Of a stretch of 64,000 nucleotides of DNA, positions 14,031 through 37,791 are shown one piece after another; the first letter of the stretch is position 1, and the number at the start of each line of letters is the position of its first letter. The translations under genes and the position numbers were made by a program. The stretch comes from Macrostomum lignano (Eukaryota). The stretch covers positions 1-64,000 of the forward strand of contig NIVC01002965.1 in NCBI GenBank assembly GCA_002269645.1. The letters are read 5' to 3'. A model generated the notes under the pieces. The model was not told where the DNA came from and searched no databases. It saw nothing but the letters and a program-made list of their open reading frames with translations.

Positions 14031-14108
14031 TCTAAGTGTTTTTATTTAGCTTTTAATAAAAAATTTTACACTACTACTTTTCAGACACTAATCTACTAAT
14101 CATACACT

Positions 14109-17640: not shown

Positions 17641-19243
17641 CAATGGCGCTGGCTTGAATGTATCAGTTTCAAATAAAGTCACCAATATGGTTACGCAATC
17701 TAAATCTAAATTCAATGGCGCTGGCTTGAATTGTGGAGTTGCGATAAAGTAGGGGTTTGCGATATTGGAGAGCGTACAATGAGTATATAAAGTAAAGTTC
17801 ATAGGAATCTTCTTTTTAATGATGTGCTTTTAATTTTTCGAATCTAAGCAAAAAATTATATTCCCGAACTCAGCGTTTCAAGCTCTTTCTAGCAATACAA
17901 GGCTCTCTTCTGAAAGTAAAAAACTCGAAGCACAAACAACAATTGAACATTCCTGCTATAAAGCATTCAAATTCATAAGGTGTACATTCAGCGCTAGCTA
18001 CAGTGAGAGGCCTGCAAGTTGATGCATTGAAATTAACAACCAAGCCAGCCCATGAATAATTGAATAGCGACAACCGCCCCTCAATTAAAATGTGTTGCGC
18101 AACCTTTCAACGCTTGTAGCTCTCCACGCGAGTGTAGAGAACCAATGCTATAGTTGGCACTGAGTTATGATGCAATACAATTCCATCGGCAGTCAGACTG
18201 CTTCTCAATCGGAAAGAACTGTTTGAACTTTAAAAAACAGGGAGAAAATGGAGTTTTTCGAATATTTAAGCCCGAAAAAATGAAGCAATTTCTTAGCAAA
18301 ATTTTGTGTACCAGCGCACCATCAATACGCATCGAATGCAGAAAACCCCACGAAATTCCGACTATGTAGAGTCAAGTTAAGCAAAGGTTCCTATAGGTAC
18401 ATAGTTTTGATTTTTAGTATATTGGATGGAATGTACTATAGAAAGGAATTAGGCCTAATCTAATATTTATATTGATCAAATCAATAAAGCAATATGCAAT
18501 TTATCTATTTTAATATCAAATTATTAACTATTACCTATTATCATTAATAAACATGATTTTTGTATGGTTAGATTTTGATTTGATACTTTTGGTATACTAT
18601 AAGCTGTATAGGACTAGTATAGTAGTAAGACTTGTAGGAGTGTAGGACTCAACAAACTGACTCTGAGCTTACATTGCATAGTAGTAGTAAAAGTAGCTAG
18701 CTATAACTAATATAGTTTTTATTATACTTTATCTGTATGGTACAAGCATGCTAAATGACCTTTTTTGAGTGGTCTGGTAGCCAAAATCAGAAAACCAGTT
18801 TTGAAACTAGTTTTGGCCAAAAACTGGGATTTTAAAACCAATTAACCAGTTCCACAAAATTGAGGGTTTTTGGCATCCCTAGTTGGCACCCATTTTATGG
18901 CTATCTGAATTGAATCAATGCAGAGTTTAGTGTCTTTCTCAAAGACAAATTGTTTCAATGTGTTGAGAGTTAAATATCCCCAGCCCCAACTTTCAAGTTG
19001 TGAGTCTAAGGCTTTATATTAGTAGGTAAATGTTATTAATTATAGGAAATGTATGCTTCTTTAACTTTATGTTCTACCTAAAAACAGGTATTTAGAACTT
19101 CCAAAAGTATCAGTACCTACAATTAAACTCTATAATATTATTGCAATTGAATATTTAGCTATTGTATTATATTTTAAATTCTTTTCATTATAAAAAAAAG
19201 TTTTTAATATTTTCAGTCTAATAGCACTGTAGCCCCCGAGCAA

Positions 19244-20842
19244 ATGGACACGGTACTGGCCTCTATGCTGACTGTGCTCCAAGCCGCAGCCTTCATCATT
19301 TTTCCCAATGTTGGTGGTGCTGTTGGCTCCATAGTGACTGGCAAAGAGCTCAAAGATTGGTACCTCAAGCTCAACAAGCCGCCATGGACTCCACCAAACT
19401 GGGTCTTCCCACCAATGTGGATCTTCTTGTACTCGTGCATCGGCTTTGCTAGCTGGATCGTGTTCCTTCATGTGGGATTTCAAAATGTTGGAATGTATCT
19501 GTATGCCGCCCAGCTGGCTTTGAACTGGGCTTGGTCGCCCCTGTTCTTCGGCGCTCACTGGTGCGTATTGTGTTCGTCACATTGTTTTTATGCAGAATTT
19601 ACACTGATTTCTGCAAATCTGAATCTTGAGATCCTTCACCCAACCCCAAATCTTAACCCTAACCGATTCTTTACTCAACCCGATTCTTCACCCAACTCGA
19701 ATCTTCACCCAACCCGAATCTTCACCCAACTCGAATCTTCACTTAACCAGAATCTTCACCCAACCCGAATATTTACCCAGCCCGAATCCTCACCCAACTC
19801 GAATCTTCACCCAACCCGAATCTTTACCCAACCAGAATCTTCACCCAACCCGAATCTTTACCTAACTCGAATCTTCACCCAACCCGATCGAATCATCACC
19901 CAACTCGAATCTTCACTTAACCAGAATCTTCACCCAACCCGAATCTTCACCCAACCCGAATCTTCACCCAACCCGAATCTTCACCCAACCCGAATCTTCA
20001 CCCAACCCGAATCTTCACCCAACCCGAATCATCACCCAACTCGAATCTTCACTTAACCAGAATCTTCACCCAACCCGAATATTTACCCAGCCCGAATCCT
20101 CACCCAACTCGAATCTTCACTCAACCCGAATCTTCACCCAACTCGAATCTTCACTTAACCAGAATCTTCACCCAACCCGAATCTTCACCCAACCCGAATC
20201 TTCACCCAACCCAAATCTTCACCCAACCCAAATCTTCACCCAACCCGAATCTTTACCCAACTCGAATCTTCACTTAACCAGAATCTTCACCCAACCCGAA
20301 TCTTCACCCAACTCGAATCTTCACTTAACCAGAATCTTCACCCAACCCGAATCTTCACCCAACCCAAATCTTCACCCAACCCGAATCTTCACCCAACCCG
20401 ATTCTTCACCCAACCCGAATCTTCACCCAAACCGATTCTTCACCCAACCCGATTCTTCACCCAACCTGAATCTTCACCCAACTCGAATCTTTACCCAACC
20501 CGAATCTTCACCCAACCCGAATATAACTCAACCCGAGTCTTCACCCAACTCGAATCTTCACCCAACCCGAATCTTGAATGAAGCGATACTGTTAGACCAT
20601 TATGGTTTATTTTAGTTATTAGCCATTAAACTTGTCTTTGCAGGGTGGCCCTAGCCGCACTGGACATGATGGCCATGATTGGCCTTTCAATCGCCTGTGG
20701 CATCGAGTTTTACCAAGTCAACCCCGTTGCTGGGGCCCTCATTGTGCCCTACCTGCTCTGGCTGAGTCTGGCTCTGTCAATCAATGTCTACGTTTATTTT
20801 TATAACGACACCGCAGTGTTGCGCAACGAAAAGAAGACCTGA
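19244..20842 (+). CDS. TSPO: Translocator protein (TspO/MBR family) paralogue 1, 171 aa
   Basis: Exons 19244-19560 and 20644-20842 (GT-AG, phase 2). Motifs WYLKLNKPPWTPPNWVF, QLALNWAWSPLFFG and PYLLW. Confidence 0.93.
19630..20575. repeat. 17-bp minisatellite in the TSPO-1 intron, about 55 copies
   Basis: Unit ACCCAACCCGAATCTTC. Confidence 0.95.
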
Positions 20843-21728: not shown

Positions 21729-23047
21729 ATGTCTCACCTACTAGCAAACGCCTCAGCCTACCTGAAACCTGCCGCATTTGTGATCGCGCCACACCTTGGC
21801 GGCGCATTCGGCGCTATTGTCACTCGCAATGAGATCCCGGTCTGGTACCGTCGGATCAACAAACCGCCGTGGACGCCGCCAAACTGGGTGTTCGGGCCTA
21901 TGTGGTCGTTTTTGTACACGAGTATTGGCTACTCAAGCTGGCTTATTTACAAAGAGCTCGGACTGCAGAATAAGCCAATGTACCTGTTTGGTGCTCAGCT
22001 GGCTCTTAACTGGGCCTGGTCACCGCTCTTCTTTGGGGCGCACAGGTCTGTCAGATGCTGGCAACTTTAAACTAAACATTGTTATCAGTCTAGTTTTCTG
22101 CTGTCTGTCTCCCCGTGTGGACTATCTCTCCATCTCCCTCTGTGATCTCTCTCCTTTCTCCCATTAACTGTCTCCCACTCCCTTCTCCCTGTCTCCCTCT
22201 CCCTATCCCCTTCTCCCATCTCCCTGTCTCCCTCTCCCTATCCAATCTACCTGTCTCCCTCTCCCTGTCTCCCTCTCCCTCTCCCTTTCTCCCTCTCCCT
22301 GTCTCCCTCTCCCATCTACCTGTCTCCCTCTCCCTGTCTCCGTCTCCCTTTCTCCCTCTCCCTATCTCCTATCTCCCTGTCTCCCTCTCCCTTCTCCCTG
22401 TCTTCCTCTCCCTTCTACCTGTCTCCCTTCCCGGTCTCCCTCTCCCTGTCTCCCTCTCCCTGTCTCCCTCTCCCTGTCTCCCTCTCCCATCTACCTGTCT
22501 CCCTCTCCCTGTCTCCGTCTCCCTTTCTCCCTCTCCCTATCTCCTATCTCCCTGTCTCCCTCTCCCTTCTCCCTGTCTTCCTCTCCCTTCTACCTGTCTC
22601 CCTTCCCGGTCTCCCTCTCCCTGTCTCCCTTCTCCCTGTCTCCCTCTCCCATCTCCCTCTCCCATCTCCCTCTCCCATCTCCCTGTCTCCCTCTCTGTCT
22701 CCCTCTCCCTTTCTCCCTCTTCTTTCACTCCTGGCTTTCTGTTCTATCTTCTCCAATCTCCCCTAGACAGTTTAATCAGTCAAAAAGCAACAGAATATTT
22801 TCCACCTGCAGCACCATTAATTCCGCTATTTTCTTCGCCTCTAACATTCGCCAACAGAGTCGGCCTGTCGGTCATTGACATGGTTGGCATGCTGGGCCTC
22901 GCGGCCCTGTGCGCCAAAGAGTTCCGGCCCGTAAGTCAGACAGCCTTCCGCCTCATGCTGCCCTACCTGGGCTGGCTTAGCCTGGCCCTGTCAATCAATG
23001 TCTACGTTTGGCTGAACAACGATTCCAAGACTCTCCGCGTGGATTGA
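21729..23047 (+). CDS. TSPO: Translocator protein paralogue 2, 168 aa
   Basis: Exons 21729-22045 and 22858-23047 (GT-AG, phase 2, same intron position as paralogue 1). Motifs WYRRINKPPWTPPNWVFG and PYLGW. Confidence 0.93.
22115..22735. repeat. Polypyrimidine (CT-rich) low-complexity tract in the TSPO-2 intron
   Basis: Almost purine-free CTCCCTGT / CTCCCT repeats. Confidence 0.95.
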
Positions 23048-23489
23048 GCTTAGAGACAGCAAGCACTTGTAACACCTTGTTTATTGGCAATTCACCTGTT
23101 CACCCTTGATCTATTTCATCAAGTTTTTAGTTTGACAATCTTGTCCCAGATTTATTGTAGTTGCAAGTTCAACTTTGAATACCAATTATTAAATGAGTGC
23201 CTTATTATTTTCGATAATTTATTGTTGCTGTGCGTTTCGTAACAAATTTTCATTCGCACAAAATTGTGCAATTCGATTTTGTTCCGCTTTTCGAATTTCG
23301 AATTTCGTGATTTGCCACGGCTCGTGAGACAAGTTTTAGTGCAAAACAAAAATAGTGTACTATTCTATACTTTAGAAATATTTCGACACAATTGTTTCCC
23401 AACGTTTTTCTATCTGTTTCTTGCTTCTTTTAAATTGCTTTCTTGGTCGTTATCGCTATAAATGGGGCTATACAGTTCCTTTTTAGGTT

Positions 23490-24238
23490 GTTAAAATCGC
23501 GTCGTTCGTTGTTAGGATCTCCATTTGGTTGTTAAAATCGCCCTTTTGGTTGTTAAAACCGCCCTTTTGGTTGTTAGAATCGCCCTTTTAGTTGTTAAAA
23601 TCGCCCTTTTGGTTGTTAGAATCGCCCTTTTGGTTGTTAGAATCGCCCTTTTAAATGTTAGAATCGCCATTTTGGTTGTTAGAATAGCCCTTTTGGTTGT
23701 TAAAATAGCACTTTTGGTTGTTAGAATCGCCCTTTTGGTTGTTAGAATCGCCCTTTTGGTTGTTAGAATCGCCCTTTGGGTTGTTAGAATCGCCCTTTTG
23801 GTTGTTAGAATAGCCCTTTTGGTTGTTAGAATCGCCCTTTGGGTTGTTAGAATCGCCCTTTTGGTTGTTAGAATAGCCCTTTTGGTTGTTAAAATAGCCC
23901 TTTTGGTTGTTAGAATCGCCCTTTTGGTTGTTAAAATAGCCCTTTTGGTTGTTAGAATCGCCCTTTTGGTTGTTAGAATAGCCCTTTTGGTTGTTAAAAT
24001 AGCCCTTTTGGTTGTTAGAATAGCCCTTTTGGTTGTTAAAATAGCCCTTTTGGTTGTTAGAATAGCCCTTTTGGTTGTTAAAATAGCCCTTTTGGTTGTT
24101 AGAATCGCCCTTTTGGTTGTTAGAATAGCCCTTTTGGTTGTTAAAATAGCCCTTTTGGTTGTTAGAATCGCCCTTTTGGTTGTTAGAATCGCCCTTTTGG
24201 TTGTTAGAATCGCCCTTTGGGTTGTTAGAATCGCCTTC
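23490..24238. repeat. 21-bp minisatellite, about 34 copies
   Basis: Unit GTTGTTAGAATCGCCCTTTTG, between TSPO-2 and TSPO-3. Confidence 0.95.
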
Positions 24239-24360: not shown

Positions 24361-27300
24361 ATGTCGCCAATCTCTGACTACTTGAAACCGGCCGCCTTTG
24401 TTCTGCTGCCTCACGTCGGTGGCATCGGAGGAGCCATAATTACGCGCTCGCAGATCCCGGTCTGGTATAGCAACTTGGTCCGCGCACCCTGGAATCCACC
24501 AAAATGGGTATTCGGACCCGTGTGGACCAGCCTGTACACTGGCATGGGCTACGCTAGCTGGCTAGTGTACAAAGAGGCTGGACTCAAGAGTACACCTATG
24601 TACTTGTACGGTGCTCAGCTGGCTCTTAATTGGGCTTGGACGCCCATGTTTTTCGGCGCTCACAAGCAAGTGGATTGATTTTATAATAATTTAATCCACT
24701 AATTCGCTAATGTATTTAGCGGCCGTCTCCGAGGCCCCGAAAACCCTGGGGTTTGGGCCGCAGACACCAGCTGCTACTAATGTCTTGATGGCAGCCGACA
24801 GTAGAAGCTATATAGTCTATGGTCTTAACCCCGGGGGTTTCGCGCTGCGTCTGAGGCGGCTTGAGAGGCCCATCTAGGTAATAAAGCATTTTCCTAGCTA
24901 ATTGAGCCTAGGAGCAAGCAATTTAAGCCTTATTGGGGGAATCAAGCTATTGAAGACTTGCTTTTCATTGTCGATGACCCAAAAGGGGGTCTATGGAGCA
25001 ACCAATTTGAGAATCTGGGCGCGCAATTAATCCCTTTTCACAGTGCTCGTATATCCTTCACGAATAACTTCACTGAAATAACGTCTGCAAATAGATGGCA
25101 TATCAAAAAATGATTGAAATTAACACTGATTTCAGAGAAACCAATCAAAACAGGCAAAGGCAAAACCATGGCATTCAATATAAGCTGAGAACAATCGTGT
25201 CTCTCAGGATGCTCATCCACTGCATCTTGGGCTGTAGCAAAACTATCGTCACTGCTCTGCTCGCTAAATTCTTCGTCTGCCATATCCATGTTTGTCTAAT
25301 GAAATCTGTTTTTTTTTCTATGGTTTAAGGCTTGCATAACTGTGGAAAGGATTAAAAGCGCCCAGATTCTCAAATTGGCTGCTCCATGGACCCCCTTTCG
25401 GGCCATAGACAATGAAAAGCAAGTCTTCAATGGCTTGATTTTCCCACTAGGGGTTGAATCGCTTGCTCCTGGGCTCAATTGGCTTGAAAAATGCTATATA
25501 ATCTGTGCATTTGGGTTTACACGCACAGAATTTAATTCAAGATATGTTTGCCATAGCAATGGAGCTTTTGTCTATGGTCCATTCGGTTCATAGCGGCTCT
25601 ATAGATTCACCCCAAGATTTTCATTTAAACATAATTAAGTCATGCTAAAAAGCTCTTTTTGTTTTTCTTATAGTTGAGCTGATTGCATCTTTGACGTCAC
25701 TTTGTTTGTACATTGAAAGGGGATGTCAACTTAAGCACCAGAATGGAGCCCGAAGTTCAGCTCCGGACCAAACCGACTGCAATCGATAACTTGTCGGCCC
25801 AGACGACTAGAATCGCCGAGACATCCCATCCGGCTCCCTTCCTTGGGGTCCCAGGGGATAAAGGGGATAAAATGGGGATCTCATGTCAACTTAAGGCTCT
25901 GGAATGGAGCCCGAAGTTCAGCTCCGGACCAAACCGACTGCAATCGATAACTTGTCGGCCCAGACGACTAGAATCGCCGAGACATCCCATCCGGCTCCCT
26001 TCCTTGGGGTCCCAGGGGATAAAGGGGATAAAATGGGGATCTCATGTCAACTTAAGGCTCTGGAATGGAGCCCGAAGTTCAGCTCCGTACCAAACCGACT
26101 GCAATCGATAACTTGTCGGCCCAGACGACTAGAATCGCCGAGACATCCCATCCGGCTCCCTTCCTTGGGGTCCCAGGGGATAAAGGGGATAAAATGGGGA
26201 TCTCATGTCAACTTAAGGCTCTGGAATGGAGCCCGAAGTTCAGCTCCGGACCAAACCGACTGCAATCGATAACTTGTCGGCCCAGACGACTAGAATCGCC
26301 GAGACATCCCATCCGGCTCCCTTCCTTGGGGTCCCAGGGGATAAAGGGGATAAAATGGGGATCTCATGTCAACTTAAGGCTCTGGAATGGAGCCCGAAGT
26401 TCAGCTCCGGCCCAAACCGACTGCAATCGATAAGTTGTCGGCCCAGACGACTAGAATCGCCGAGACATCCCATCCGGCTCCCTTCCTTGGGGTCCCAGGG
26501 GATAAAGGGGATAAAATGGGGATCTCATGTCAACTTAAGGCCCTGGAATGGAGCCCGAAGTTCAGCTCCGGACCAAACCGACTGCAATCGATAACTTGTC
26601 GGCCCAGACGACTAGAATCGCCGAGACATCCCATCCGGCTCCCTTCCTTGGGGTCCCAGGGGATAAAGGGGATAAAATGGGGATCTCATGTCAACTTAAG
26701 GCTCTGGAATGGAGCCCGAAGTTCAGCTCCGGACCAAACCGACTGCAATCGATAACTTGTCGGCCCAGACGACTAGAATCGCCGAGACATCCCATCCGGC
26801 TCCCTTCCTTGGGGTCCCAGGGGATAAAGGGGATAAAATGGGGATCTCATGTCAACTTAAGGCTCTGGAATGGAGCCCGAAGTTCAGCTCCGGACCAAAC
26901 CGACTGCAATCGATAACTTGTCGGCCCAGACGACTAGAATCGCCGAGACATCCCATCCGGCTCCCTTCCTTGGGGTCCCAGGGGATAAAGGGGATAAAAT
27001 GGGGATCTCATGTCAACTTAAGGCCCTGGAATGGAGCCCGAAGTTCAGCTCCGGACCAAACCGACTGCAATCGATAACTTGTCGGCCCAGACGACTAGAA
27101 TCGCCGAGACATCCCATCCGGCTCCCTTCCTTGGGGTCCCAGGGGATAAAGGGGATAAAATGGGGATCTCATGTCAACTTAAGGCTCTGGAATGGAGCCC
27201 GAAGTTCAGCTCCGGCCCAAACCGACTGCAATCGATAAGTTGTCGGCCCAGACGACTAGAATCGCCGAGACATCCCATCCGGCTCCCTTCCTTGGGGTCC

Positions 27301-30300
27301 CAGGGGATAAAGGGGATAAAATGGGGATCTCATGTCAACTTAAGGCCCTGGAATGGAGCCCGAAGTTCAGCTCCGGACCAAACCGACTGCAATCGATAAC
27401 TTGTCGGCCCAGACGACTAGAATCGCCGAGACATCCCATCCGGCTCCCTTCCTTGGGGTCCCAGGGGATAAAGGGGATAAAATGGGGATCTCATGTCAAC
27501 TTAAGGCCCTGGAATGGAGCCCGAAGTTCAGCTCCGGACCAAACCGACTGCAATCGATAACTTGTCGGCCCAGACGACTAGAATCGCCGAGACATCCCAT
27601 CCGGCTCCCTTCCTTGGGGTCCCAGGGGATAAAGGGGATAAAATGGGGATCTCATGTCAACTTAAGGCTCTGGAATGGAGCCCGAAGTTCAGCTCCGGAC
27701 CAAACCGACTGCAATCGATAACTTGTCGGCCCAGACGACTAGAATCGCCGAGACATCCCATCCGGCTCCCTTCCTTGGGGTCCCAGGGGATAAAGGGGAT
27801 AAAATGGGGATCTCATGTCAACTTAAGGCTCTGGAATGGAGCCCGAAGTTCAGCTCCGGACCAAACCGACTGCAATCGATAACTTGTCGGCCCAGACGAC
27901 TAGAATCGCCGAGACATCCCATCCGGCTCCCTTCCTTGGGGTCCCAGGGGATAAAGGGGATAAAATGGGGATCTCATGTCAACTTAAGGCTCTGGAATGG
28001 AGCCCGAAGTTCAGCTCCGTACCAAACCGACTGCAATCGATAAGTTGTCGGCCCAGACGACTAGAATCGCCGAGACATCCCATCCGGCTCCCTTCCTTGG
28101 GGTCCCAGGGGATAAAGGGGATAAAATGGGGATCTCGTGTCAACTTAAGGCTCTGGAATGGAGCCCGAAGTTCAGCTCCGGACCAAACCGACTGCAATCG
28201 ATAAGTTGTCGGCCCAGACGACTAGAATCGCCGAGACATCCCATCCGGCTCCCTTCCTTGGGGTCCCAGGGGATAAAGGGGATAAAATGGGGATCTCATG
28301 TCAACTTAAGGCTCTGGAATGGAGCCCGAAGTTCAGCTCCGGACCAAACCGACTGCAATCGATAAGTTGTCGGCCCAGACGACTAGAATCGCCGAGACAT
28401 CCCATCCGGCTCCCTTCCTTGGGGTCCCAGGGGATAAAGGGGATAAAATGGGGATCTCGTGTCAACTTAAGGCTCTGGAATGGAGCCCGAAGTTCAGCTC
28501 CGGACCAAACCGACTGCAATCGATAAGTTGTCGGCCCAGACGACTAGAATCGCCGAGACATCCCATCCGGTTTCAAGTGACGAAGCTCTATTCAATTCGA
28601 ATATCGCATTAGCGGGTGTATTTTATTTCAGCTATTATACATTGATTGTTAAGTAATAAAAATGATTTGCTCGTATCGAAACCTGTTAAAAATGCTGATC
28701 TGGAAACTCAGTTTGAAAAAATTAACTTGTAAATTCGTTTGGTTATTAGTAAGCAGAACTTTTGACGATAAACCGAAACCATGTATATTGGTAAAATAAA
28801 GAATATCACGCAAGGCTGTACAAGTTATGACGTAATGGATACAAAGCATATCATGCAAAGCTGTACAAGTTATCAAAGTAATAAAAACAAAGCATGTCAT
28901 GCAAAGCAGCACACGTTTTTAAGCAAATAAAGTAACGCCTCTCACGCAAAGCTTAGTAAAATCATAATTGCAAAAGTTTCTCAGTCCTAAGAAACGGTTT
29001 TTGGGTTTAAGTTCTTTGCTTCAGTAAAAAATACTTCCAATTTTTAGTTAATTGTGAGTCTAAAAGAAATTGAAACAACTAATTCAAAGCTTTTGTTATT
29101 TGATGTCAGTCTGAATTATCTTCACATGTAACCTATGGTACGTAAAGAATGCGTGAGATGACATTGTTTCTTAATCTGCATGTCCTTTAAAATCTGCAAT
29201 ACAAAACGTACAGTACACTCGCTTAAAACAATTGTATTTTCGCTAAAAATGCTTTTACGAGTTTAAAAGTGCAACGAGCACGATGCACTCAGGCTCACGT
29301 ACGAACGGGTTATAGTCTGACGTAACTTTCATGTCGTCAATTCTCGTCCACACACAGCTCAGTACGCTTGCTGTGAAATGTCCCGATTTCAGTCGGTTTC
29401 CATGGTGTGATATTGTGGCCACTGGCTTACCAAGTGTAGAAACACCCCCTGACCTTGAAGAAAAGCTTACAGGAGTTTGAAGCTTAAGGTGGCCATCCAT
29501 ACTAGCACGATCAAGATATATCAGGGTAAACTTTCCAGGTGTTACTACGATCTCTTGATTACAATCGCCCAGGCAATTGGCGTCCGAACATTTCACTACC
29601 TGAGGAGCGACAAAAGCGCAGAAGATTTTGTCTAAACTGACAATTGAGCGCTCAAATTGACAGAGAGGAATGCAAATCACTCTGTTATCGATTGTGCCAA
29701 CAGGAACTTCAGCACTTGTGCGCTGGCAATCCCGACAAGTTTGAATGAGTGAAAATTCTGTGAAAGCATCTGATGACAGAAATTCCAGATGTATTAGAAG
29801 CGTTTGAACAAATTCGTTGACGCAATGGTGCTGATTTGTTTGAAATGAATCTGGATGTTGCAACCGAACTGCCGTTAACAGTGGAGTGACTGTTGCAGAC
29901 CGCTGTTGCATCTCCATCAGAAGACGAAGCAGCTCTCGATGGACTTGGTCGTTGCTAGTCTCTTTTAAAATGCATCCATTAGAATGCAGGCAGAGAAACA
30001 ATTGCACTGCTGCATTTGCGTAGCACTGCAGGCCATTATTTGGCAACCCAAATAACTTCTTCGGCGAATTCAATGAACCAGTAGCATTTGAACTGTGCCT
30101 CTGTTCATCTTGCTGCGATTCAGCACTGTCTCTGCGAGGTGCATTTGGAGCTGGATGACCACCAGATTGATCATTGTAAAGATTGGCAATCAGTGCTTTT
30201 GGCAAAGCACTGTCAATAAATCGGAAGCTGCTGCCGCACATGTTGTAGCTTTCGGGGTGATATGCATAACAGCCTAGCATTCTAACCACAGCCATAACAT

Positions 30301-33300
30301 GACTGTCACACCCTGCTGTCCTGCTTCCGGCCTTTGAGGATGAAAAGTAGCCATGCAGACGCAGCAGCCCCGAGTCACGAAATCCGAATCGGTTACCACT
30401 TGCAGTTTCGCAAATACGAAGGACAACTCGGTAAGTTTTTGACCGATGACGGGAATGAAGAACGGCTAAATATATCCAAGATGGCCTCCATTCTCCAAAC
30501 TTACTGCTCCACCCCTTTGGTGGCGCTCGCTGATGAAACTTCCAGCATTTTAAATGGCTTGGCAGTTCAGAAATCAACAATTCGAAATCGCGCCACGAGT
30601 CTCCAGCGTAGCTACTGAGCACCTCATGAACTCTGACGTTTTCGATGTAGCGTTTTGACTGAAGAACGTGGTATGGGCCGATGCTAAGCTCTTCCAGATT
30701 TCTTTCGTCAACGCTGGGGAACCCTGAACTTTCAGGGTCCAGGGGATCCACTGCTGTCCATTTTCGGGTAGAACTCGTTGGTATTCGAGTCAAATCGCAA
30801 TTGTACTCAAGTTGCTCAATTTCGTCTAGCTCATTCGCAATGAAAAGACGTTTAGCAAAGTTCCGTCCGTATTCGAACATGGAGCAATCTGACCATGACG
30901 GCGGCAGACTCCTTGTAGCTTGAAATCCTGGATGCGAACGGTTGAATTTTGCCATGGAGTTTTCAATAACAACATCGAGCCGGCTGCGTTCGGTAAACTC
31001 TGGGGCATGTAGCCATTGGTACGGCTCCTGTCGCTCATTTATGCATTTGTCCTGCTTGATTGCAGCAAAGCTACATTCTACGAGATAACGGAAAAGCGTA
31101 GCGCAGCGACTTGTATTTGCTTCGATTGATGTAAGCTTTCCTGGTATTGATCGGTCACCAACAGGAGCCTCATTATTTACAAATTCAAACTGCTCGTTTA
31201 GAACTCGGTCACCTGGACTGGTCGGAAATAGAAGCGTCGTGCAGCCTTTACTATTAGTCTCTATAAAGTCGCGGAAGTTAACCGAAGTTGGTGAACAAAG
31301 TTGGTGGCTGTAACCTTTGTCGAAAATGCCAATAACGTGATAATCTTTCTGTACAGAGCACAGAATGCGCAACAAAGTGGGCTCTATTAGTCCTTCAGCC
31401 TCCATGTCAACTTGCATTGCAGTCAAATTCCCATCGCCCATTGTTGGCGAGATAGCGGCGGTAAGGGGAGCGGTGTAGATAACTTTTCCTCTACTGTTGA
31501 CAACCGCCATTTTTTTGTTCACATTCATTTTCTTGCCGGAAAAGTAAGTTCGAATTTGCGTGTGGTGTGAGCTGCTCTTAGGGAGATAAAAGTAAGTATG
31601 ATCACCCACTAGAAGAACAAGCTTCTTGCCTTTGAGTAGTGTGTGAAATACACCGAGAATAAATTGATCGCGTACTACATTTTCCTCAAGCAGAGTCTGA
31701 ATCGGAGTCGACGCTATCGACCTCGGTTGATATGGATCCCGTAGGTACTGCTCCTTGGCAATCTCCCAAAAAATGTCGCATGCTCTTTGGGCAGAAATGT
31801 TGAAATCGAAAGCTAATGATTGAAAGCTGCAACCTTGGCGAAGCTTCTTCAGGTACAAAAATATTCGAGATGGCTTTGTCAAAATACGAAGGCGAGATAC
31901 TTCTGGTAACATTTCTGAGAAGCTATCGAAATCACTATAGCTAAGACCGCAAATACGTTTGAACTCCTTCTCATTTGCGGTTCGTGGAAAAAGGTTTGGG
32001 TTCAAAAAAACTTTCACATACTTACCACCGACCGCAAGAAACTGAAGCGCCTCTCGTGCGTTTCTCGGAGGCGCGAAGGCTCCAGACGATTCAGATGAGC
32101 AGCGACCACATCTAGTCGTTTCGAGATGTCGGTTCAAATTGGCTGCTTTGCTGAATTGATGACCACATTGAGAGCAAGTAAAATCGGACATTACTAGCAA
32201 GTATAAAACGCAATCTGCAACAAATCTGCACCTGTCATAAAACTAAGTAAGAAAAACTGACCAAAACCTTAACTTCATTAATATATCACTTAAAATATAT
32301 CACTTAAACTAATGCTACAAATACTTGACGCACAGTATCAAAAATCTCTCGCCTAAAGTGGTCAAATCAAAACCGCGAAAACATTCTCAAAAATCCGGAA
32401 AAATTAAACGACGGAAATATTACAATGCAAACAATATATAATAGCTAAAATAAAATACACCCGCTAATGCGATATTCGAATAGAATAGAGCTTCGTCACT
32501 TGAAACCGGATGGGATGTCTCGGCGATTCTAGTCGTCTGGGCCGACAAGTTATCGATTGCAGTCGGTTTGGTCCGGAGCTGAACTTCGGGCTCCATTCCA
32601 GAGCCTTAAGTTGACATGAGATCCCCATTTTATCCCCTTTATCCCCTGGGACCCCAAGGAAGGGAGCCGGATGGGATGTCTCGGCGATTCTAGTCGTCTG
32701 GGCCGACAAGTTATCGATTGCAATCGGTTTGGTCTGGAGCTGAACTTCGGGCTCCATTCCAGAGCCTTAAGTTGACATGAGATCCCCATTTTATCCCCTT
32801 TATCCCCTGGGACCCCAAGGAAGGGAGCCGGATGGGATGTCTCGGCGATTCTAGTCGTCTGGGCCGACAAGTTATCGATTGCAGTCGGTTTGGTCCGGAG
32901 CTGAACTTCGGGCTCCATTCCAGAGCCTTAAGTTGACACGAGATCCCCATTTTATCCCCTTTATCCCCTGGGACCCCAAGGAAGGGAGCCGGATGGGATG
33001 TCTCGGCGATTCTAGTCGTCTGGGCCGACAAGTTATCGATTGCAATCGGTTTGGTCCGGAGCTGAACTTCGGGCTCCATTCCAGAGCCTTAAGTTGACAT
33101 GAGATCCCCATTTTATCCCCTTTATCCCCTGGGACCCCAAGGAAGGGAGCCGGATGGGATGTCTCGGCGATTCTACTCGTCTGGGCCGACAAGTTATCGA
33201 TTGCAATCGGTTTGGTCCGGAGCTGAACTTCGGGCTCCATTCCAGAGCCTTAAGTTGACATGAGATCCCCATTTTATCCCCTTTATCCCCTGGGACCCCA

Positions 33301-35354
33301 AGGAAGGGAGCCGGATGGGATGTCTCGGCGATTCTAGTCGTCTGGGCCGACAAGTTATCGATTGCAATCGGTTTGGTCCGGAGCTGAACTTCGGGCTCCA
33401 TTCCAGAGCCTTAAGTTGACATGAGATCCCCATTTTATCCCCTTTATCCCCTGGGACCCCAAGGAAGGGAGCCGGATGGGATGTCTCGGCGATTCTAGTC
33501 GTCTGGGCCGACAAGTTATCGATTGCAGTCGGTTTGGTCCGGAGCTGAACTTCGGGCTCCATTCCAGAGCCTTAAGTTGACACGAGATCCCCATTTTATC
33601 CCCTTTATCCCCTGGGACCCCAAGGAAGGGAGCCGGATGGGATGTCTCGGCGATTCTAGTCGTCTGGGCCGACAAGTTATCGATTGCAGTCGGTTTGGTA
33701 CGGAGCTGAACTTCGGGCTCCATTCCAGAGCCTTAAGTTGACATGAGATCCCCATTTTATCCCCTTTATCCCTGGGACCCCAAGGAAGGGAGCCGGATGG
33801 GATGTCTCGGCGATTCTAGTCGTCTGGGCCGACAACTTATCGATTGCAGTCGGTTTGGTCCGGAGCTGAACTTCGGGCTCCATTCCAGAGCCTTAAGTTG
33901 ACACGAGATCCCCATTTTATCCCCTTTATCCCCTGGGACCCCAAGGAAGGGAGCCGGATGGGATGTCTCGGCGATTCTAGTCGTCTGGGCCGACAAGTTA
34001 TCGATTGCAGTCGGTTTGGTCCGGAGCTGAACTTCGGGCTCCATTCCAGAGCCTTAAGTTGACATGAGATCCCCATTTTATCCCCTTTATCCCCTGGGAC
34101 CCCAAGGAAGGGAGCCGGATGGGATGTCTCGGCGATTCTAGTCGTCTGGGCCGACAAGTTATCGATTGCAGTCGGTTTGGTCCGGAGCTGAACTTCGGGC
34201 TCCATTCCAGAGCCTTAAGTTGACATGAGATCCCCATTTTATCCCCTTTATCCCCTGGGACCCCAAGGAAGGGAGCCGGATGGGATGTCTCGGCGATTCT
34301 AGTCGTCTGGGCCGACAAGTTATCGATTGCAGTCGGTTTGGTCCGGAGCTGAACTTCGGGCTCCATTCCAGAGCCTTAAGTTGACATGAGATCCCCATTT
34401 TATCCCCTTTATCCCCTGGGACCCCAAGGAAGGGAGCCGGATGGGATGTCTCGGCGATTCTAGTCGTCTGGGCCGACAAGTTATCGATTGCAGTCGGTTT
34501 GGTCCGGAGCTGAACTTCGGGCTCCATTCCAGAGCCTTAAGTTGACATGAGATCCCCATTTTATCCCCTTTATCCCCTGGGACCCCAAGGAAGGGAGCCG
34601 GATGGGATGTCTCGGCGATTCTAGTCGTCTGGGCCGACAAGTTATCGATTGCAGTCGGTTTGGTCCGGAGCTGAACTTCGGGCTCCATTCCAGAGCCTTA
34701 AGTTGACATGAGATCCCCATTTTATCCCCTTTATCCCCTGGGACCCCAAGGAAGGGAGCCGGATGGGATGTCTCGGCGATTCTAGTCGTCTGGGCCGACA
34801 AGTTATCGATTGCAGTCGGTTTGGTCCGGAGCTGAACTTCGGGCTCCATTCTGGTGCTTAAGTTGACATCCCCTTTGATAAAATTAATTGGATTACACAG
34901 GTGTAACTCATGAATGATTGGGCTACCTTGCTACCATAGACAAAAGCTGCATTACTTTCTCTCATCTCTTTAGTGTACTTTTTATGGACTGTGTGCGTAC
35001 GTAATTGACGATGACTGCTTCGCCTTCACACTCGCTAGCAAGCCTTATTTGAAAATGACACATCACCTTATTTTAATGTAAGCGACCTTGAAAGTTGATC
35101 ATCTTCACGACTTTTCACTTCACTAAAACCGCAGGGTTGGCCTCGCCTGCCTGGACCTGCTGGCAACCCTCGGCCTTGTTGTCGCCTGCGCTAAGGAATT
35201 CTCGTCGGTGAACCAGACAGCCGGCCGTCTCATGCTGCCCTACATTGGCTGGCTGTGCCTGGCTGCTACCCTCAACATCTACATCTGGTTCTACAACGAC
35301 TCGCGCACCCTTAGCGGCGAAGGTGCCTCCCAGCAGGCCAAGTCGAAGAAGTAA
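24361..35354 (+). CDS. TSPO: Translocator protein paralogue 3, 174 aa, with a 10.5-kb GC-AG intron
   Basis: Exon 1 24361-24665 ends CAC AA|gcaagt. Exon 2 35135-35354 (ccgcag|G GTT GGC CTC; not in the ORF track) encodes KVGLACLDLLATLGLVVACAKEFSSVNQTAGRLMLPYIGWLCLAATLNIYIWFYND...KK*, collinear with exon 2 of paralogues 1 and 2. Confidence 0.88.
24885..25495. mobile_element. MITE-like element with ~160-bp imperfect inverted repeats
   Basis: 24885-25044 is the reverse complement of 25339-25495 with scattered mismatches (shared core TTGAAGACTTGCTTTTCATTGTC; CAATTTGAGAATCTGGGCGC). No TSD resolved. Confidence 0.7.
25717..28648 (+). repeat. Left inverted arm: about 17.6 x 161-bp units plus ~78 bp unique inner IR
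   Basis: The ATGGAGCCC landmark recurs every 161 bp from 25743 to 28480 (18 times). Confidence 0.97.
29255..32200 (-). CDS. 981-aa fusion: C2H2 finger, HTH + DDE transposase (DDE_Tnp_4-like), degenerate SWIM-like finger, ubiquitin-specific protease (peptidase C19)
   Basis: CSQCGHQFSKAANLNRH; LRQGCSFQSLAFDFNIS; GD200HTY, GD256GNL, FD294KGY, VE375CSF; KAGSRTAGCDSHV; GLPNNGLQC726YANAAVQ, QHHCVNEF, HHGNRLKSGH941FTA, WTRID955D956. Intronless, no stops. Confidence 0.9.
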   Translation of the reverse strand: MLVMSDFTCSQCGHQFSKAANLNRHLETTRCGRCSSESSGAFAPPRNAREALQFLAVGGKYVKVFLNPNLFPRTANEKEFKRICGLSYSDFDSFSEMLPEVSRLRILTKPSRIFLYLKKLRQGCSFQSLAFDFNISAQRACDIFWEIAKEQYLRDPYQPRSIASTPIQTLLEENVVRDQFILGVFHTLLKGKKLVLLVGDHTYFYLPKSSSHHTQIRTYFSGKKMNVNKKMAVVNSRGKVIYTAPLTAAISPTMGDGNLTAMQVDMEAEGLIEPTLLRILCSVQKDYHVIGIFDKGYSHQLCSPTSVNFRDFIETNSKGCTTLLFPTSPGDRVLNEQFEFVNNEAPVGDRSIPGKLTSIEANTSRCATLFRYLVECSFAAIKQDKCINERQEPYQWLHAPEFTERSRLDVVIENSMAKFNRSHPGFQATRSLPPSWSDCSMFEYGRNFAKRLFIANELDEIEQLEYNCDLTRIPTSSTRKWTAVDPLDPESSGFPSVDERNLEELSIGPYHVLQSKRYIENVRVHEVLSSYAGDSWRDFELLISELPSHLKCWKFHQRAPPKGWSSKFGEWRPSWIYLAVLHSRHRSKTYRVVLRICETASGNRFGFRDSGLLRLHGYFSSSKAGSRTAGCDSHVMAVVRMLGCYAYHPESYNMCGSSFRFIDSALPKALIANLYNDQSGGHPAPNAPRRDSAESQQDEQRHSSNATGSLNSPKKLFGLPNNGLQCYANAAVQLFLCLHSNGCILKETSNDQVHRELLRLLMEMQQRSATVTPLLTAVRLQHPDSFQTNQHHCVNEFVQTLLIHLEFLSSDAFTEFSLIQTCRDCQRTSAEVPVGTIDNRVICIPLCQFERSIVSLDKIFCAFVAPQVVKCSDANCLGDCNQEIVVTPGKFTLIYLDRASMDGHLKLQTPVSFSSRSGGVSTLGKPVATISHHGNRLKSGHFTASVLSCVWTRIDDMKVTSDYNPFVREPECIVLVALLNS
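29258..30062 (-). other. USP/C19 deubiquitinase catalytic domain (C-terminal ~265 aa of the transposase ORF)
   Basis: Cys box, Q-box, CRDC...CSDANC zinc-ribbon pair, His box and the following Asp occur in canonical order. Confidence 0.85.
32428..34875 (-). repeat. Right inverted arm: about 14.6 x 161-bp units plus unique inner IR
   Basis: The reverse-complement landmark recurs 15 times from 32596 to 34849; one unit is 160 bp. Confidence 0.97.
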
Positions 35355-35824: not shown

Positions 35825-36555
35825 GTTTCCGGGGGATGCAGTGGGTCTTCAGGAGATGCAGTGAGTCTTCAGGAGATGCAGTGGGTCTTCAGGAGATGCA
35901 GTGTGTCTTCAGGAGATGCAGTGGGTCTTCAGGAGATGCAGTGGGTCCTCAGGAGATGCGGTGGGTTTTCTGGGGATGCAGTCAGTCTTCAGGAGATGCA
36001 GTGGGTCTTCAGAAGATGCGGTGGGTTTTCGGGAGATGCAGTGGATCTTCAGGGGATGCAGTCAGTCTTCAGGAGATGCGGTAGGTTTTCAGATGTAGTG
36101 TGCCTTCAGGGCCTGCAGTGGGTTCAGGGACTGTAGTGGGTCTTCAGGAGATGCGGTGGGTTTTCGGGAGATGCAGTGGATCTTCAGGAGATGCAGTGGG
36201 TCTTCAGGAGATGCGGTGGGTTTTCGGGAGATGCGGTGGGTCTTCAGGAGATGCGGTGGGTTTTCGGGAGATGCAGTGGATCTTCAGGGGATGCAGTGGG
36301 TCTTCAGGAAATGCGGTAGGTTTTCGGGAGATGCAGTGGGTCTTCAGGGAATGCAGTCAGTCTTCAGGAGATGCGGTAGGTTTTCAGATGTAGTGCGCCT
36401 TCAGGGCCTGCAGTGGGTTCAGGGACTGTAGTGGGTCTTCAGGAGATGTAGCGGACCTTCACGGGATGCAGTGGGTCTTCAGGGGATGCGTTGGGTTTTC
36501 TGGAGATGTAGTGGGTCCTCAGGGGACGCAGTGGGTCTTCAAGGGATGCAGTGGG
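35825..36555. repeat. 20-bp minisatellite, about 35 copies
   Basis: Unit CTTCAGGAGATGCAGTGGGT. Confidence 0.95.
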
Positions 36556-37791
36556 TCGTCAGAGAAGCAGCTTGTATTTTAAAGCATATTATTGTTCGAA
36601 AGTTACCAGAAATAATCTACATGCAGCTCGATCACCCAAAAGTAACATAGGGTGCATAGATTGTGATTTGCACTATACACAATATATAAAATCTTATCTC
36701 GAATTTCAACTTTCAAACCCAAGGTTGCAACAGGGCAGCTGCATGTAGATAGAGATTAGCCATTTCTAAGTCAGGTGTTACTGCCCAACTGCAGCACTTT
36801 CATTTTAGCTGTGCCTTGATTATCCGTGCCGAACTCTTTTGATCCTTGGGTGGGGTTAAATTCCATGCTGCTCTGACGCTATCTATAACTGACCATTTTA
36901 CCTTAAGAGAAGACATAGAGAGAGATATTTCACTGCTTCCAAGTCTGTAGCGTTGCAACTACGTTTTTAGATAAAGCTTGCTGCAAAAATCATTTTCAAT
37001 AAGTGTCATTTGAGTGCACACAACTAGAAGCATATTTTATCAGGTTTTGGTAACTCTGGAAATTTAGCAGATGCGAAATTGTTTCTCTGGCTTAGATACG
37101 AGTAGTTAGAAATATGGCTCTGGTTATACCTGGGTAAATACAGTAAGTAGTAAGTTGAGTCTAATTGAAATCCTGCAAACTCCAAGTGTGCAGGATTTCC
37201 CGCATACTGACGCAGATCGACGCATCCCAGGGGTTAGAAAAATTGGGGCGTACCCCTCTTGGGGGGGACAGCTTTAGAGACTTTGGTTTGGACATGTGGG
37301 GTCCAGCTCAGACTGCAGCGGTTTGCCCAACGCTCGGCATGGTGGTTGAAGGCTTGGAGGAGGTCTCATAGGACCGCGGTTGATGGTTCAGCCATAGGGG
37401 TGGTAACAGCGTCCGTATAGCGGACCTTGTGTACCGGGTCAGGACACGGACTGCTGAGAAAATCTTCCATGACCACGTTCTAGAGAATTGGGCTGAGGAC
37501 TCCACCTTGCGGTCCACCTTTCTGGGCCTCCACATAGCAGGAGTGCCCGAGGACGTGCAAGGTGGTAGTCCGATGAGAGACCATTAACAGAATTACTACG
37601 TATCCAATAGAAAGTTAGACGTCTTCAATACGTATTTTTTAGGTCGTAAGAACGTCCGCGAGACGTATCCAATGCATTTATGATCCTCAAAAAGCTGGTT
37701 TCTACAAAAAAGGAGAATAAATAATGTTTCTATTACTATTTATTACTTGTGTGAGACAGTGGCTCGCAACAGAAGACAATGGCGCTCAATT

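What the first reader, a model, noticed from the sequence alone, without database searches (positions are those of the whole stretch)
29258..30062. Transposase carries an apparently active USP (C19) deubiquitinase
Cys726 (GLPNNGLQCYANAAVQ), His941 (HHGNRLKSGHFTA) and Asp955/956 (WTRIDD) follow the canonical USP order, with the zinc-ribbon cysteines retained, joined by a low-complexity linker. Transposon-borne proteases I know of are mostly Ulp1/SENP (C48) or OTU types; a C19 fusion on this transposase type is unfamiliar to me. Possible roles (inference): protecting the transposase from proteasomal turnover, removing H2A/H2B ubiquitin to counter silencing, or self-processing.
Basis: partly seen in the sequence, partly recalled or inferred. 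Interest (0 to 1): 0.88.

Follow-up and report, generated by a model that had tools for sequence, protein, structure and literature searches.

The report
Jumping gene with built-in deubiquitinase
A recently active cut-and-paste transposon of the flatworm Macrostomum lignano encodes one protein in which a DDE transposase is fused in frame to a compact ubiquitin-specific protease with all catalytic residues intact; the fusion is old and recurrent in this transposase clade, and I found no published description of it.

Summary
Window 29258-30064 (-) is the C-terminal 269 residues of a 978-aa ORF (29255-32191). It matches Pfam UCH/USP above the curated cut-off. With a 16-sequence alignment it folds at pLDDT 93, and all 50 listed PDB neighbours are USP catalytic domains. 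The Cys box with its oxyanion Asn, the His box, the Asp and four zinc-ribbon Cys are present. They persist in three diverged subfamilies of the same genome and in metagenomic transposase-USP fusions only 22-25% identical.

The N-terminal 690 residues are an IS5/PIF-Harbinger-type (PHIS) DDE transposase. The element (25719-34873, 9155 bp) has 2.5-2.9 kb inverted arms built of 161-bp tandem units. It sits precisely between AAA and TTT with no target-site duplication, and a 100%-identical empty site elsewhere in the assembly shows this. That is the Spy mode of integration. At least 12 intact copies are ≥99.8% identical at the DNA level, and there are 181 termini genome-wide.

Isopeptidase activity and biological role are untested. 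My best guess is that a tethered deubiquitinase protects the transposase or transpososome from ubiquitin-dependent restriction. Deubiquitinases of other classes, and UCH domains in Helitrons, are known in transposons. A USP fused to a PHIS/Spy-like transposase appears undescribed.

The parts
25716..25718 (+). Host AAA half of the AAATTT target site
   Evidence: 26 of 30 termini are preceded by AAA and 4 by TAA. The empty site reads ...CATTGAAATTTGATAA.
25719..34873 (.). Whole autonomous element (9155 bp), a Spy-like PHIS DNA transposon
   Evidence: Termini GGGGATGTCAAC.../...GTTGACATCCCC. The joined flanks match G000:C2578:120121-120420 at 100% over 300 nt.
25719..28658 (+). Left inverted arm: 18 tandem 161-bp units plus an 88-bp inner unique part. 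Each unit repeats a terminus-like GGGGAT(CTCA)TGTCAACTTAAG motif.
   Evidence: TRF array 25723-28570, period 161, 17.7 copies, 99% matches. Inverted repeat I1. Unit spacing.
32418..34873 (-). Right inverted arm: 15 tandem 161-bp units plus the inner unique part
   Evidence: TRF array 32506-34869, 14.7 copies. Arms 98-100% complementary. Unit spacing.
34874..34876 (+). Host TTT half of the target site
29255..32191 (-). Single uninterrupted CDS, 978 aa plus stop: zinc finger, HTH, DDE transposase, SWIM remnant, linker, USP
   Evidence: Twelve copies in the genome have the same open frame.
32108..32182 (-). N-terminal C2H2/C2HC-type zinc finger (CxxC-x12-H-x5-C)
   Evidence: Pfam zf-C2H2 18.6 bits, below the cut-off. 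PDB zinc-finger matches are weak. Spacing read from the sequence.
31766..31882 (-). HTH_Tnp_4-like helix-turn-helix
   Evidence: PF13613 E=7.8e-5, 22.6 bits against a cut-off of 27. 17 of 45 relatives match it.
31043..31645 (-). DDE catalytic core: D197, D291, E372 from the Met (P0001 D214, D308, E389); spacing D(93)D(80)E
   Evidence: D214, D308, R385 and E389 are nearly invariant in the 45-sequence alignment. 23 of 45 relatives hit DDE_Tnp_4. Coordinates.
30284..30313 (-). Remnant of a SWIM-like zinc motif (GCDSHVMAVV). Relatives have GYxCxCxxGxRxxGCCxHV; here the first CxC is lost.
   Evidence: Consensus of alignment A7. Sequences.
30065..30175 (-). Low-complexity linker of about 37 aa, essentially unconstrained
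   Evidence: 18% identity and pN 0.65 against subfamily 2, close to pS. Coordinates.
29258..30064 (-). USP (peptidase C19) catalytic domain, 269 aa. Asn718 is codon 30038-30040, Cys723 30023-30025, His938 29378-29380 and Asp952 29336-29338. Zinc-ribbon Cys819/822/868/873.
   Evidence: Pfam UCH. PDB profile hits USP14/12/8/46. AF2 pLDDT 93.1, pTM 0.91. Foldseek PDB hits USP18/USP2/USP46 and others, E about 1e-17, TM 0.72-0.77. Invariant columns.

Best explanation
What it is (shown). The finding is the C-terminal domain of the single protein of an autonomous, very recently active DNA transposon of the flatworm Macrostomum lignano. The protein reads: zinc finger, HTH, IS5/PIF-Harbinger-type (PHIS) DDE transposase, degenerate SWIM-like motif, roughly 37-aa disordered linker, then a minimal 269-aa USP (C19) catalytic domain. 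The element has 2.5-2.9 kb inverted arms made of 161-bp tandem units. It integrates exactly between AAA and TTT without a target-site duplication, which is the hallmark of Spy elements.

The fusion is not a recent capture. It is present in three M. lignano subfamilies, in at least five further transposase-USP proteins in 50%-identity clusters from marine and other metagenomes, and in a clade that also has USP-less members.

How it most likely works (inferred). The USP is a catalytically competent thiol isopeptidase delivered in cis with the transposase. Tethered to the transpososome, it would remove ubiquitin (or possibly a ubiquitin-like modifier) from the transposase itself, or from proteins at the donor or target site. 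That would shield the transposition machinery from ubiquitin-dependent turnover or restriction.

My confidence by layer:
- Identity and architecture: about 0.95.
- Catalytic competence: about 0.75.
- Self-protection as the main role: about 0.35.

The overall confidence figure given for this explanation (0.65) weighs these layers together.
For: USP identity:
- Pfam UCH is above the gathering score.
- A profile search of PDB returns only USPs, with the Cys box and His box aligned to USP14.
- The AF2 model has pLDDT 93.1. All 50 listed PDB neighbours are USP catalytic domains, and the top viral neighbours are giant-virus USPs of similar size.

Catalytic competence:
- The catalytic His and three zinc-ribbon Cys are invariant in the 16-sequence alignment. 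The catalytic Cys and the acid/amide position after the His box are nearly invariant. The window and subfamily 2 carry Asn five residues before the Cys.
- Against the 56%-identical subfamily, the USP has pN 0.38 against saturated pS 0.82. The linker has pN 0.65 and the DDE core 0.21.
- The frame is open through the USP in 12 copies and in subfamily 2.

Transposase class:
- 23 of 45 relatives hit DDE_Tnp_4 and 17 hit HTH_Tnp_4.
- The D/D/E columns are nearly invariant.

Mobility and Spy-like integration:
- 181 termini genome-wide.
- AAA or TAA flanks at all 30 termini examined.
- A 100%-identical empty AAATTT site.
- Copies differ from the window copy by 3-6 of 2985 nt.

Age of the fusion:
- P0011, P0022, P0034 and P0049, plus fragments P0066 and P0083, carry transposase followed by USP.
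- All USP-bearing transposases fall in one clade with 100% support.
- 8 of 9 of their USP domains cluster together.

Precedent for function: Helitron-encoded VTD deubiquitinases are biochemically active, and their authors proposed that they protect transposition proteins from the proteasome (PMC9741609).
Against: - No enzymatic, expression or transposition data exist for this protein.
- The QQD box, usually acidic in USPs, reads QHHC here (QQHC in subfamily 2). This may alter recognition of the ubiquitin tail or signal a different substrate.
- The His-box Tyr is Phe.
- The USP evolves faster than the transposase core: 41% against 67% identity between subfamilies.
- Several well-sampled relatives (P0004-P0006) lack the USP, so it is dispensable for this transposase type in general.
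- The catalytic geometry of the model could not be measured, because no coordinates were available to scripts.
- No evidence bears on which substrate is deubiquitinated.
Confidence: 0.65

Rival explanations
1. The tethered USP acts on chromatin or DNA-repair factors rather than on the transposase. It would strip H2A/H2B ubiquitin, or PCNA/FANCD2/RNF168-type marks, at the donor break or target. That would open chromatin, counter silencing, or bias repair of the excision gap towards homologous recombination, which restores the donor copy.
For: The USP is covalently tied to a DNA-bound enzyme with multiple binding-site-like repeats in the arms. Structural neighbours include USP1, USP46/12 and the SAGA DUB module. 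The family expanded to about 90 elements with near-identical copies.
Against: Structural neighbours are spread over the whole USP family with near-equal scores, so they say nothing about substrate. No histone- or nucleosome-binding accessory domain was detected. The idea is entirely inferential.
Confidence: 0.25
2. The domain is a catalytically dead or weak pseudo-USP. It would serve as a ubiquitin-binding (reader) module, or have shifted to a ubiquitin-like modifier rather than ubiquitin.
For: The QQD-box Asp is replaced by Cys in the window lineage and in several other transposon-borne USPs (QHC signature in the window, L013, P0008, P0066 and P0083). The top PDB hit is the ISG15-specific USP18, though only by a hair.
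Against: The Cys, His and following Asp/Asn are retained at 22-25% identity across lineages, which is not expected of a mere binding module. Flatworms are not known to have ISG15 (own knowledge).
Confidence: 0.12
3. The USP is a recently transduplicated host gene fragment carried along without function.
For: Transposons do capture host fragments. The USP is the fastest-evolving folded part of the protein.
Against: It is in frame at the same C-terminal position in three subfamilies with USP domains about 40% identical, and in distant metagenomic relatives. Catalytic residues are invariant or nearly so. pN is well below pS and below the linker's pN. The USP domains of these transposases largely cluster together.
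Confidence: 0.03
4. The USP is a self-processing protease that releases the transposase from the polyprotein.
For: Many mobile-element proteases do self-process. The linker contains SGG.
Against: USPs need a folded ubiquitin or Ubl N-terminal to the scissile bond, and none is present. The GG is not conserved in subfamily 2.
Confidence: 0.03

Closest known systems
Spy transposons (PHIS superfamily; Han et al. 2014, PMC4122938; cgSpy, PMC11304231)
   Same: Both are cut-and-paste elements with inverted ends and a single long ORF encoding an HTH plus DDE transposase related to IS5, PIF/Harbinger and ISL2EU. Both insert precisely between AAA and TTT with no target-site duplication. TIR length is highly variable. 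The roughly 690-aa transposase part has the size of published Spy transposases (about 660-700 aa).
   Different: - A 269-aa USP domain is fused to the C-terminus; neither paper mentions ubiquitin.
- DDE spacing is D93D80E against the published D(79-80)D(44-62)E.
- The terminus is GGGGATGT against the consensus GGANNNNG.
- The long arms are tandem 161-bp arrays, whereas published long Spy TIRs show no subrepeats.
- There is an N-terminal zinc finger.
- The host phylum, Platyhelminthes, is not among those reported.
UCH domains in Helitron-like elements (HLE2 subgroups c and d; HELIANO, PMC11417382)
   Same: The same Pfam family (UCH/USP) is stably carried by a eukaryotic DNA transposon lineage. 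One of my hits (P0122) is a helicase C-terminus fused to a USP.
   Different: Those are rolling-circle RepHel elements, not DDE cut-and-paste elements. Most captured domains there lie in separate ORFs, and the paper does not say whether UCH shares the RepHel ORF. No activity or function was addressed.
Other transposon-borne cysteine deubiquitinases or Ubl proteases: VTD in Helentrons (PMC9741609), OTU and Ulp1 in Ginger (PMC2836005)
   Same: The theme is shared: a mobile element encodes a papain-fold (de)ubiquitin-type protease next to or within its transposition protein. Helitron VTDs were shown to be active deubiquitinases, and a proteasome-protection role was proposed.
   Different: The protease clans and folds differ (VTD, OTU and C48 against C19), and so do the transposon superfamilies.
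Minimal cellular and giant-virus USP catalytic domains (USP2, USP18, USP46/12, USP21; Pithovirus and Hyperionvirus USPs)
   Same: The fingers-palm-thumb USP fold (TM 0.72-0.80), the Cys box with oxyanion Asn, the His box, the Asp, and a four-Cys zinc ribbon.
   Different: Sequence identity is only 15-20%. The core is very compact at 269 aa, with no UBL, DUSP or UBP accessory domains. The QQD box reads QHHC and the His-box Tyr is Phe. It is fused to a transposase.

Membership tests
USP / peptidase C19 (Pfam UCH PF00443) | Significant match to the family profile above the curated threshold | tested here: met
   35.7 bits against a gathering score of 23.9, E=9.4e-9, covering profile positions 2-237 of 254. 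A PDB profile search returns only USPs.
USP / peptidase C19 (Pfam UCH PF00443) | USP fold (papain-like thumb and palm plus zinc-ribbon fingers) | tested here: met
   AF2 pLDDT 93.1, pTM 0.91. All 50 listed Foldseek PDB hits are USP catalytic domains, E down to 3e-17, TM 0.65-0.77.
USP / peptidase C19 (Pfam UCH PF00443) | Catalytic Cys in the N-terminal Cys box, with Asn five residues upstream | tested here: met
   GLPNNGLQC(723)YANAAVQ aligns with the USP14 Cys box. The Cys is present in every alignment row that covers it.
USP / peptidase C19 (Pfam UCH PF00443) | Catalytic His in the GH[YFW] box, followed by Asp/Asn | tested here: met
   SGH(938)FTA...WTRID(952)D. The G-H pair is invariant and the Asp/Asn column nearly invariant. 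It aligns with the USP14 His box and FDDD.
USP / peptidase C19 (Pfam UCH PF00443) | Ubiquitin C-terminal isopeptidase activity | not testable with these tools
   This needs Ub-AMC or Ub-PA assays of wild type against C723A.
PHIS superfamily (IS5 / PIF-Harbinger / ISL2EU / Spy; Pfam DDE_Tnp_4) | Homology to DDE_Tnp_4-type transposases with a conserved D, D, E triad | tested here: met
   The window protein has no direct DDE_Tnp_4 hit. Its HMMER relatives do: 23 of 45, best E=7.4e-25, and P0007 is above the cut-off. D214, D308 and E389 are nearly invariant.
PHIS superfamily (IS5 / PIF-Harbinger / ISL2EU / Spy; Pfam DDE_Tnp_4) | N-terminal HTH_Tnp_4-type DNA-binding motif | tested here: inconclusive
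   22.6 bits, below the cut-off of 27. 17 of 45 relatives match at E<=0.001.
Spy group of PHIS | Insertion between AAA and TTT with no target-site duplication | tested here: met
   Of 30 termini, 26 are flanked by AAA and 4 by TAA. No direct repeat appears in 9 element pairs. The empty site is 100% identical to the joined flanks and reads AAATTT.
Spy group of PHIS | Single long ORF encoding the transposase | tested here: met
   There is only one ORF of 220 aa or more between the arms.
Spy group of PHIS | D(79-80)D(44-62)E spacing, as published | tested here: not met
   The spacing is D(93)D(80)E. The published range is in PMC4122938. The published triad assignment may differ from mine.
Spy group of PHIS | Terminal 5'-GGANNNNG-3' consensus | tested here: not met
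   The terminus is GGGGATGT; only the leading GG agrees.
Spy group of PHIS | Phylogenetic placement within the Spy clade against reference Spy, ISL2EU and Harbinger transposases | not testable with these tools
   No Repbase or reference Spy protein sequences were available. My tree only shows a 100%-supported clade distinct from 31 other DDE_Tnp_4-type relatives.

The most novel reading that the evidence does not exclude
The USP is a functional, selected cofactor of transposition in a whole, previously unrecognised branch of Spy-like PHIS transposons. A DDE transposase would bring its own deubiquitinase to the transpososome to erase host ubiquitin marks on itself, on histones or on break-repair factors. 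Mobility, or the net copy gain after excision, would depend on Cys723. It would be the first DDE transposase shown to depend on its own deubiquitinase.
Probability: 0.3. Interest if true: 0.8.

Novelty: new variant of a known kind. Interest (0 to 1): 0.62.

Why it matters
Ubiquitin-type proteases recur in mobile elements: Ulp1 and OTU in Ginger, OTU, VTD and UCH in Helitrons, and deubiquitinases in large DNA viruses and coronaviruses. Even so, what they do for a transposon is still unknown.

This case is unusually tractable:
- There is one ORF and a minimal USP.
- The family is so young that a 100%-identical empty site is still present in the assembly.
- The host, Macrostomum lignano, is a non-pathogenic flatworm with established transgenesis.
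- The transposon type (Spy) already works in human-cell transposition assays.

A simple comparison of wild type, C723A and a USP deletion could show whether a transposase needs to fight the host ubiquitin system. It could also show whether a tethered deubiquitinase improves the stability or efficiency of a gene-transfer tool.

The finding also extends the reported range of AAA|TTT (Spy-type) integration to Platyhelminthes. It defines a clade with variable accessory domains: a C-terminal USP, or an N-terminal zinc-finger extension.

Tried and rejected
- AF2 on a 2-sequence alignment failed (pLDDT 33). Adding 14 homologues fixed it.
- The word-indexed protein search found only one relative. The exhaustive HMMER search was needed.
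- dN/dS between subfamilies could not be computed, because synonymous sites are saturated (pS 0.78-0.95). Only the pN contrasts between regions are usable.
- dN/dS among the 90-97% copies was abandoned. Their differences are private, include stops and indels, and in the most diverged copy (C1546) are mostly CpG transitions, so they reflect post-insertion decay and not selection on a master copy.
- Reading AAA...TTT as part of the TIR was rejected, because the flank varies (TAA in 4 of 30) and because of the empty site.
- The Zisupton/KDZ idea, prompted by the SWIM-like motif, was dropped. The relatives hit DDE_Tnp_4, HTH_Tnp_4 and DDE_Tnp_1.
- TARA contigs carrying P0034 gave no terminal inverted repeats, probably because the elements are truncated.
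- The P0022 contig shows only a 12-nt candidate TIR flanked by AAA/TTT. It is a single copy and not convincing.
- No reference Spy protein sequence could be obtained from paper supplements.
- Literature searches for a USP/UCH in DDE transposons found nothing.
Full report
**1. The observation**

Window 29255-32242 (- strand) is one uninterrupted frame of 995 codons (P0001). The first Met is codon 18 (window 32191-32189), so the CDS is 29255-32191 and the protein 978 aa.

Pfam-A finds UCH/USP (PF00443) at residues 732-975 of P0001, with E=9.4e-9 and 35.7 bits against a curated cut-off of 23.9. It also finds a sub-threshold HTH_Tnp_4 and an N-terminal C2H2-type finger.

From the Met, the triad is Cys723, His938 and Asp952.

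**2. Is it really a USP, and does it look active?**

- *Sequence.* A profile of the domain from two subfamilies hits only USPs in the PDB (USP14, USP12, USP8, USP46). The Cys box aligns to GLTNLGNTCYMNATVQ of USP14. The His box and Asp align to HQGRSSSSGHY...WIKFDDD.
- *Fold.* AlphaFold2 on a 2-sequence alignment failed (pLDDT 33). A 16-sequence alignment of transposon-borne and other USPs gave pLDDT 93.1 and pTM 0.91.
- *Structural neighbours.* Foldseek against the PDB lists USP catalytic domains in all 50 places: USP18, USP2, USP46/12, USP8, USP35, USP21, USP1, USP30, USP7 and others, with E down to 3e-17 and TM 0.65-0.77. Against viral models, the best matches are compact giant-virus USPs, with TM up to 0.80.
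- *Conserved residues.* In the 16-sequence alignment, the catalytic His with its preceding Gly, an upstream His, and three zinc-ribbon Cys are invariant. The catalytic Cys (missing only from a truncated fragment), the Trp, and the Asp/Asn after the His box are nearly invariant.
- *Deviations from typical USPs.* The QQD box reads QHHC. This QHC signature is shared with several other transposon-borne USPs. The His-box Tyr is Phe.

**3. Constraint**

Twelve copies in the genome keep the whole 995-codon frame open. They differ from the window copy at 3-6 of 2985 nt.

A second subfamily (L013, 56% identical) has an intact 1022-codon frame with the same architecture and triad. A third (about 45%; L015-L019) also carries the USP.

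Between the window copy and L013, synonymous sites are saturated (pS 0.78-0.95), so dN/dS cannot be computed. The nonsynonymous proportions are still informative:

| Region | pN |
|---|---|
| DDE core | 0.21 |
| Middle region | 0.23 |
| USP | 0.38 |
| Linker | 0.65 |

The USP is therefore constrained, though less so than the transposase. The linker is nearly free.

Older copies at 90-97% identity carry private stops, indels and point substitutions. In the most diverged one (C1546) these are mostly CpG transitions. They are decaying insertions and were not used to infer selection.

**4. What the rest of the protein and the element are**

*Transposase.* An exhaustive HMMER search of 1.84 billion representatives found 127 relatives. 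Of 45 aligned relatives, 23 match DDE_Tnp_4, 17 match HTH_Tnp_4 and 17 match DDE_Tnp_1. The columns of D214, D308 and E389 (P0001 numbering) are nearly invariant. The transposase therefore belongs to the IS5 / PIF-Harbinger / ISL2EU / Spy (PHIS) assemblage. Relatives share a SWIM-like GYxCxCxxGxRxxGCCxHV motif just before the linker. In the window lineage the first CxC is lost.

*Element structure.* The ORF lies between two inverted arms, 25719-28658 and 32418-34873. They are made of 18 and 15 tandem 161-bp units, 98-100% complementary between arms. Each unit repeats a terminus-like motif.

*Copy number.* The terminal 43-mer occurs 181 times in the genome (85 forward, 96 reverse) and never in the reversed control. 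Paired ends lie 0.5-14.6 kb apart. That means about 90 elements, including short non-autonomous derivatives and variable array lengths.

*Integration.*
- All 30 termini examined are flanked by AAA (26) or TAA (4).
- There is no direct repeat of flanking DNA in nine complete elements.
- Joining the window's two flanks in silico gives a 300-nt sequence found uninterrupted at 100% identity at G000:C2578:120121-120420. It reads ...CATTGAAATTTGATAA....

So the element (25719-34873, 9155 bp) inserted exactly between AAA and TTT without duplication. A 100%-identical empty site (allelic or recently duplicated) is still present in the assembly. This is the integration mode that defines Spy elements (PMC4122938).

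*Differences from published Spy elements.* The DDE spacing (D93D80E), the terminal motif (GGGGATGT against GGANNNNG), the subrepeated arms and the zinc finger all differ. I had no reference sequences for a tree. I therefore call it Spy-like and do not file it as a Spy member.

**5. Host**

A neighbouring ASC/ENaC exon (50760-52355, -) is 98% identical to a UniRef protein of Macrostomum lignano. Other animal exons (TspO, OATP) and a mariner-like ORF share the window. Published Spy surveys list arthropods, cnidarians, molluscs and a rotifer, but not flatworms.

**6. How old and how common is the fusion?**

Among the 127 representatives, I scanned with HMMs built from my own alignments. Transposase followed by a C-terminal USP occurs in P0011 (1048 aa, cluster of 20), P0022 (955 aa), P0034 (1119 aa, 19 contigs including TARA Oceans), P0049 (1639 aa), and the fragments P0066 and P0083.

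In a transposase tree, all USP-bearing proteins fall in one 24-member clade with 100% support, separate from 31 other DDE_Tnp_4-type relatives. Within that clade they are interspersed with USP-less proteins. Some of those are truncated contigs. Others are clearly complete, such as P0004-P0006, which carry an N-terminal zinc-finger extension instead.

In a small USP tree, 8 of 9 of these USP domains cluster together (support 87/88). The ninth sits on a very long branch. This fits one ancient capture followed by losses, but does not prove it.

**7. Mechanism**

*Shown:* architecture, fold, conserved catalytic residues, recent mobility, and the age of the fusion.

*Inferred:* the domain is an active thiol isopeptidase working in cis with the transposase.

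The most economical role is protecting the transposase or transpososome from ubiquitin-dependent turnover or restriction. The same proposal was made for the biochemically active VTD deubiquitinases of Helitrons (PMC9741609).

Alternatives:
- Action on chromatin or break-repair ubiquitin marks is a serious alternative.
- A reader-only pseudo-enzyme, or a Ubl-specific enzyme, is possible because of the QHC substitution.
- Self-processing and a functionless recent capture are effectively excluded (see the rival explanations).

**8. Comparison with what is known, and novelty**

Transposon-borne ubiquitin-type cysteine proteases are a known theme. Ginger elements carry OTU and Ulp1 (PMC2836005). 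Helentrons carry VTD and OTU (PMC9741609). UCH domains are stably associated with HLE2 Helitron-like elements (PMC11417382). Spy and PHIS elements are also known.

In ten full-text searches and five targeted paper reads, I found no description of a USP fused in frame to a DDE (PHIS/Spy-like) transposase. One published table lists a 963-aa ORF for Hydra Hyvu-Spy-1, against about 680-700 aa for other Spy transposases. That element may hide the same fusion, but the paper does not comment on it.

I rate the finding a new variant of a known kind. It is solid, testable and moderately surprising to a transposon specialist, with the function still open.

Noticed in passing
window 25719-28658 and 32418-34873: The inverted arms are arrays of a 161-bp unit, 18 units on the left and 15 on the right. 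Each unit contains a near-copy of the terminal motif (GGGGATCTCATGTCAACTTAAG against the terminal GGGGATGTCAACTTAAG). Published long Spy TIRs were said to lack subrepeats. Across the genome, paired ends lie 0.5-14.6 kb apart, so array length varies and deletion derivatives exist.
   Followed up: partly
G000:C2578:120121-120420 (L051/L061): An empty site 100% identical to the joined window flanks is present in the same assembly. The window insertion is therefore heterozygous, or specific to one duplicated region.
   Followed up: yes
G000:C1546:43500-46700 (L058), USP region: In this older, inactivated copy, about 15 of about 25 substitutions are CpG to TpG or CpA. The pattern resembles methylation-type decay and is unexpected to me in a flatworm.
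   Followed up: no
L013 (G000:C3075), L015-L019: M. lignano holds at least three subfamilies of this transposon, at about 56% and about 45% protein identity to the window copy. All carry the C-terminal USP. L017 is an internally deleted transposase joined to a full USP with an open frame.
   Followed up: partly
P0004-P0006 (metagenomic relatives): Complete relatives of 1043-1075 aa lack the USP. They carry instead a roughly 370-aa N-terminal extension with C2H2 fingers, so accessory domains vary within the clade.
   Followed up: partly
P0122 (455 aa, metagenomic): A helicase C-terminus (weak UvrD_C_2 and Herpes_Helicase hits) is followed by a strong UCH domain. This is probably the Helitron-like UCH association reported by HELIANO.
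   Followed up: partly
L066:1054-1065 and 4382-4393 (contig of P0022): A 12-nt inverted repeat, AAA|TAGTGTCAG...CTTACACTA|TTT, brackets the 955-aa transposase-USP ORF. It would make a roughly 3.3-kb element in an AAATTT site. It is a single copy and could be chance.
   Followed up: partly
PMC11304231, supplementary Table S1: Hydra vulgaris Hyvu-Spy-1 is listed with a 963-aa ORF in a 3517-bp element, whereas other Spy transposases are about 580-700 aa. It may carry the same USP fusion without this having been noticed.
   Followed up: no
window 58112-59209 (+): A 365-codon open frame with mariner/Tc1-like transposase features. The HTH_48, Transposase_1 and DDE_3 hits are all just below the Pfam cut-offs.
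   Followed up: partly
window 19208-19750 (+), 43715-44698 (+), 50760-52355 (-): Host exons: TspO/MBR, OATP (organic anion transporter) and an amiloride-sensitive sodium channel. The last is 98% identical to a Macrostomum lignano UniRef entry, which identifies the species.
   Followed up: yes
window 11443-14045, 20000-20575, 22168-22720, 23482-24235, 35835-36570: Dense mini- and microsatellite arrays (periods 14-21 bp and longer) surround the element. Several create long spurious open frames.
   Followed up: no
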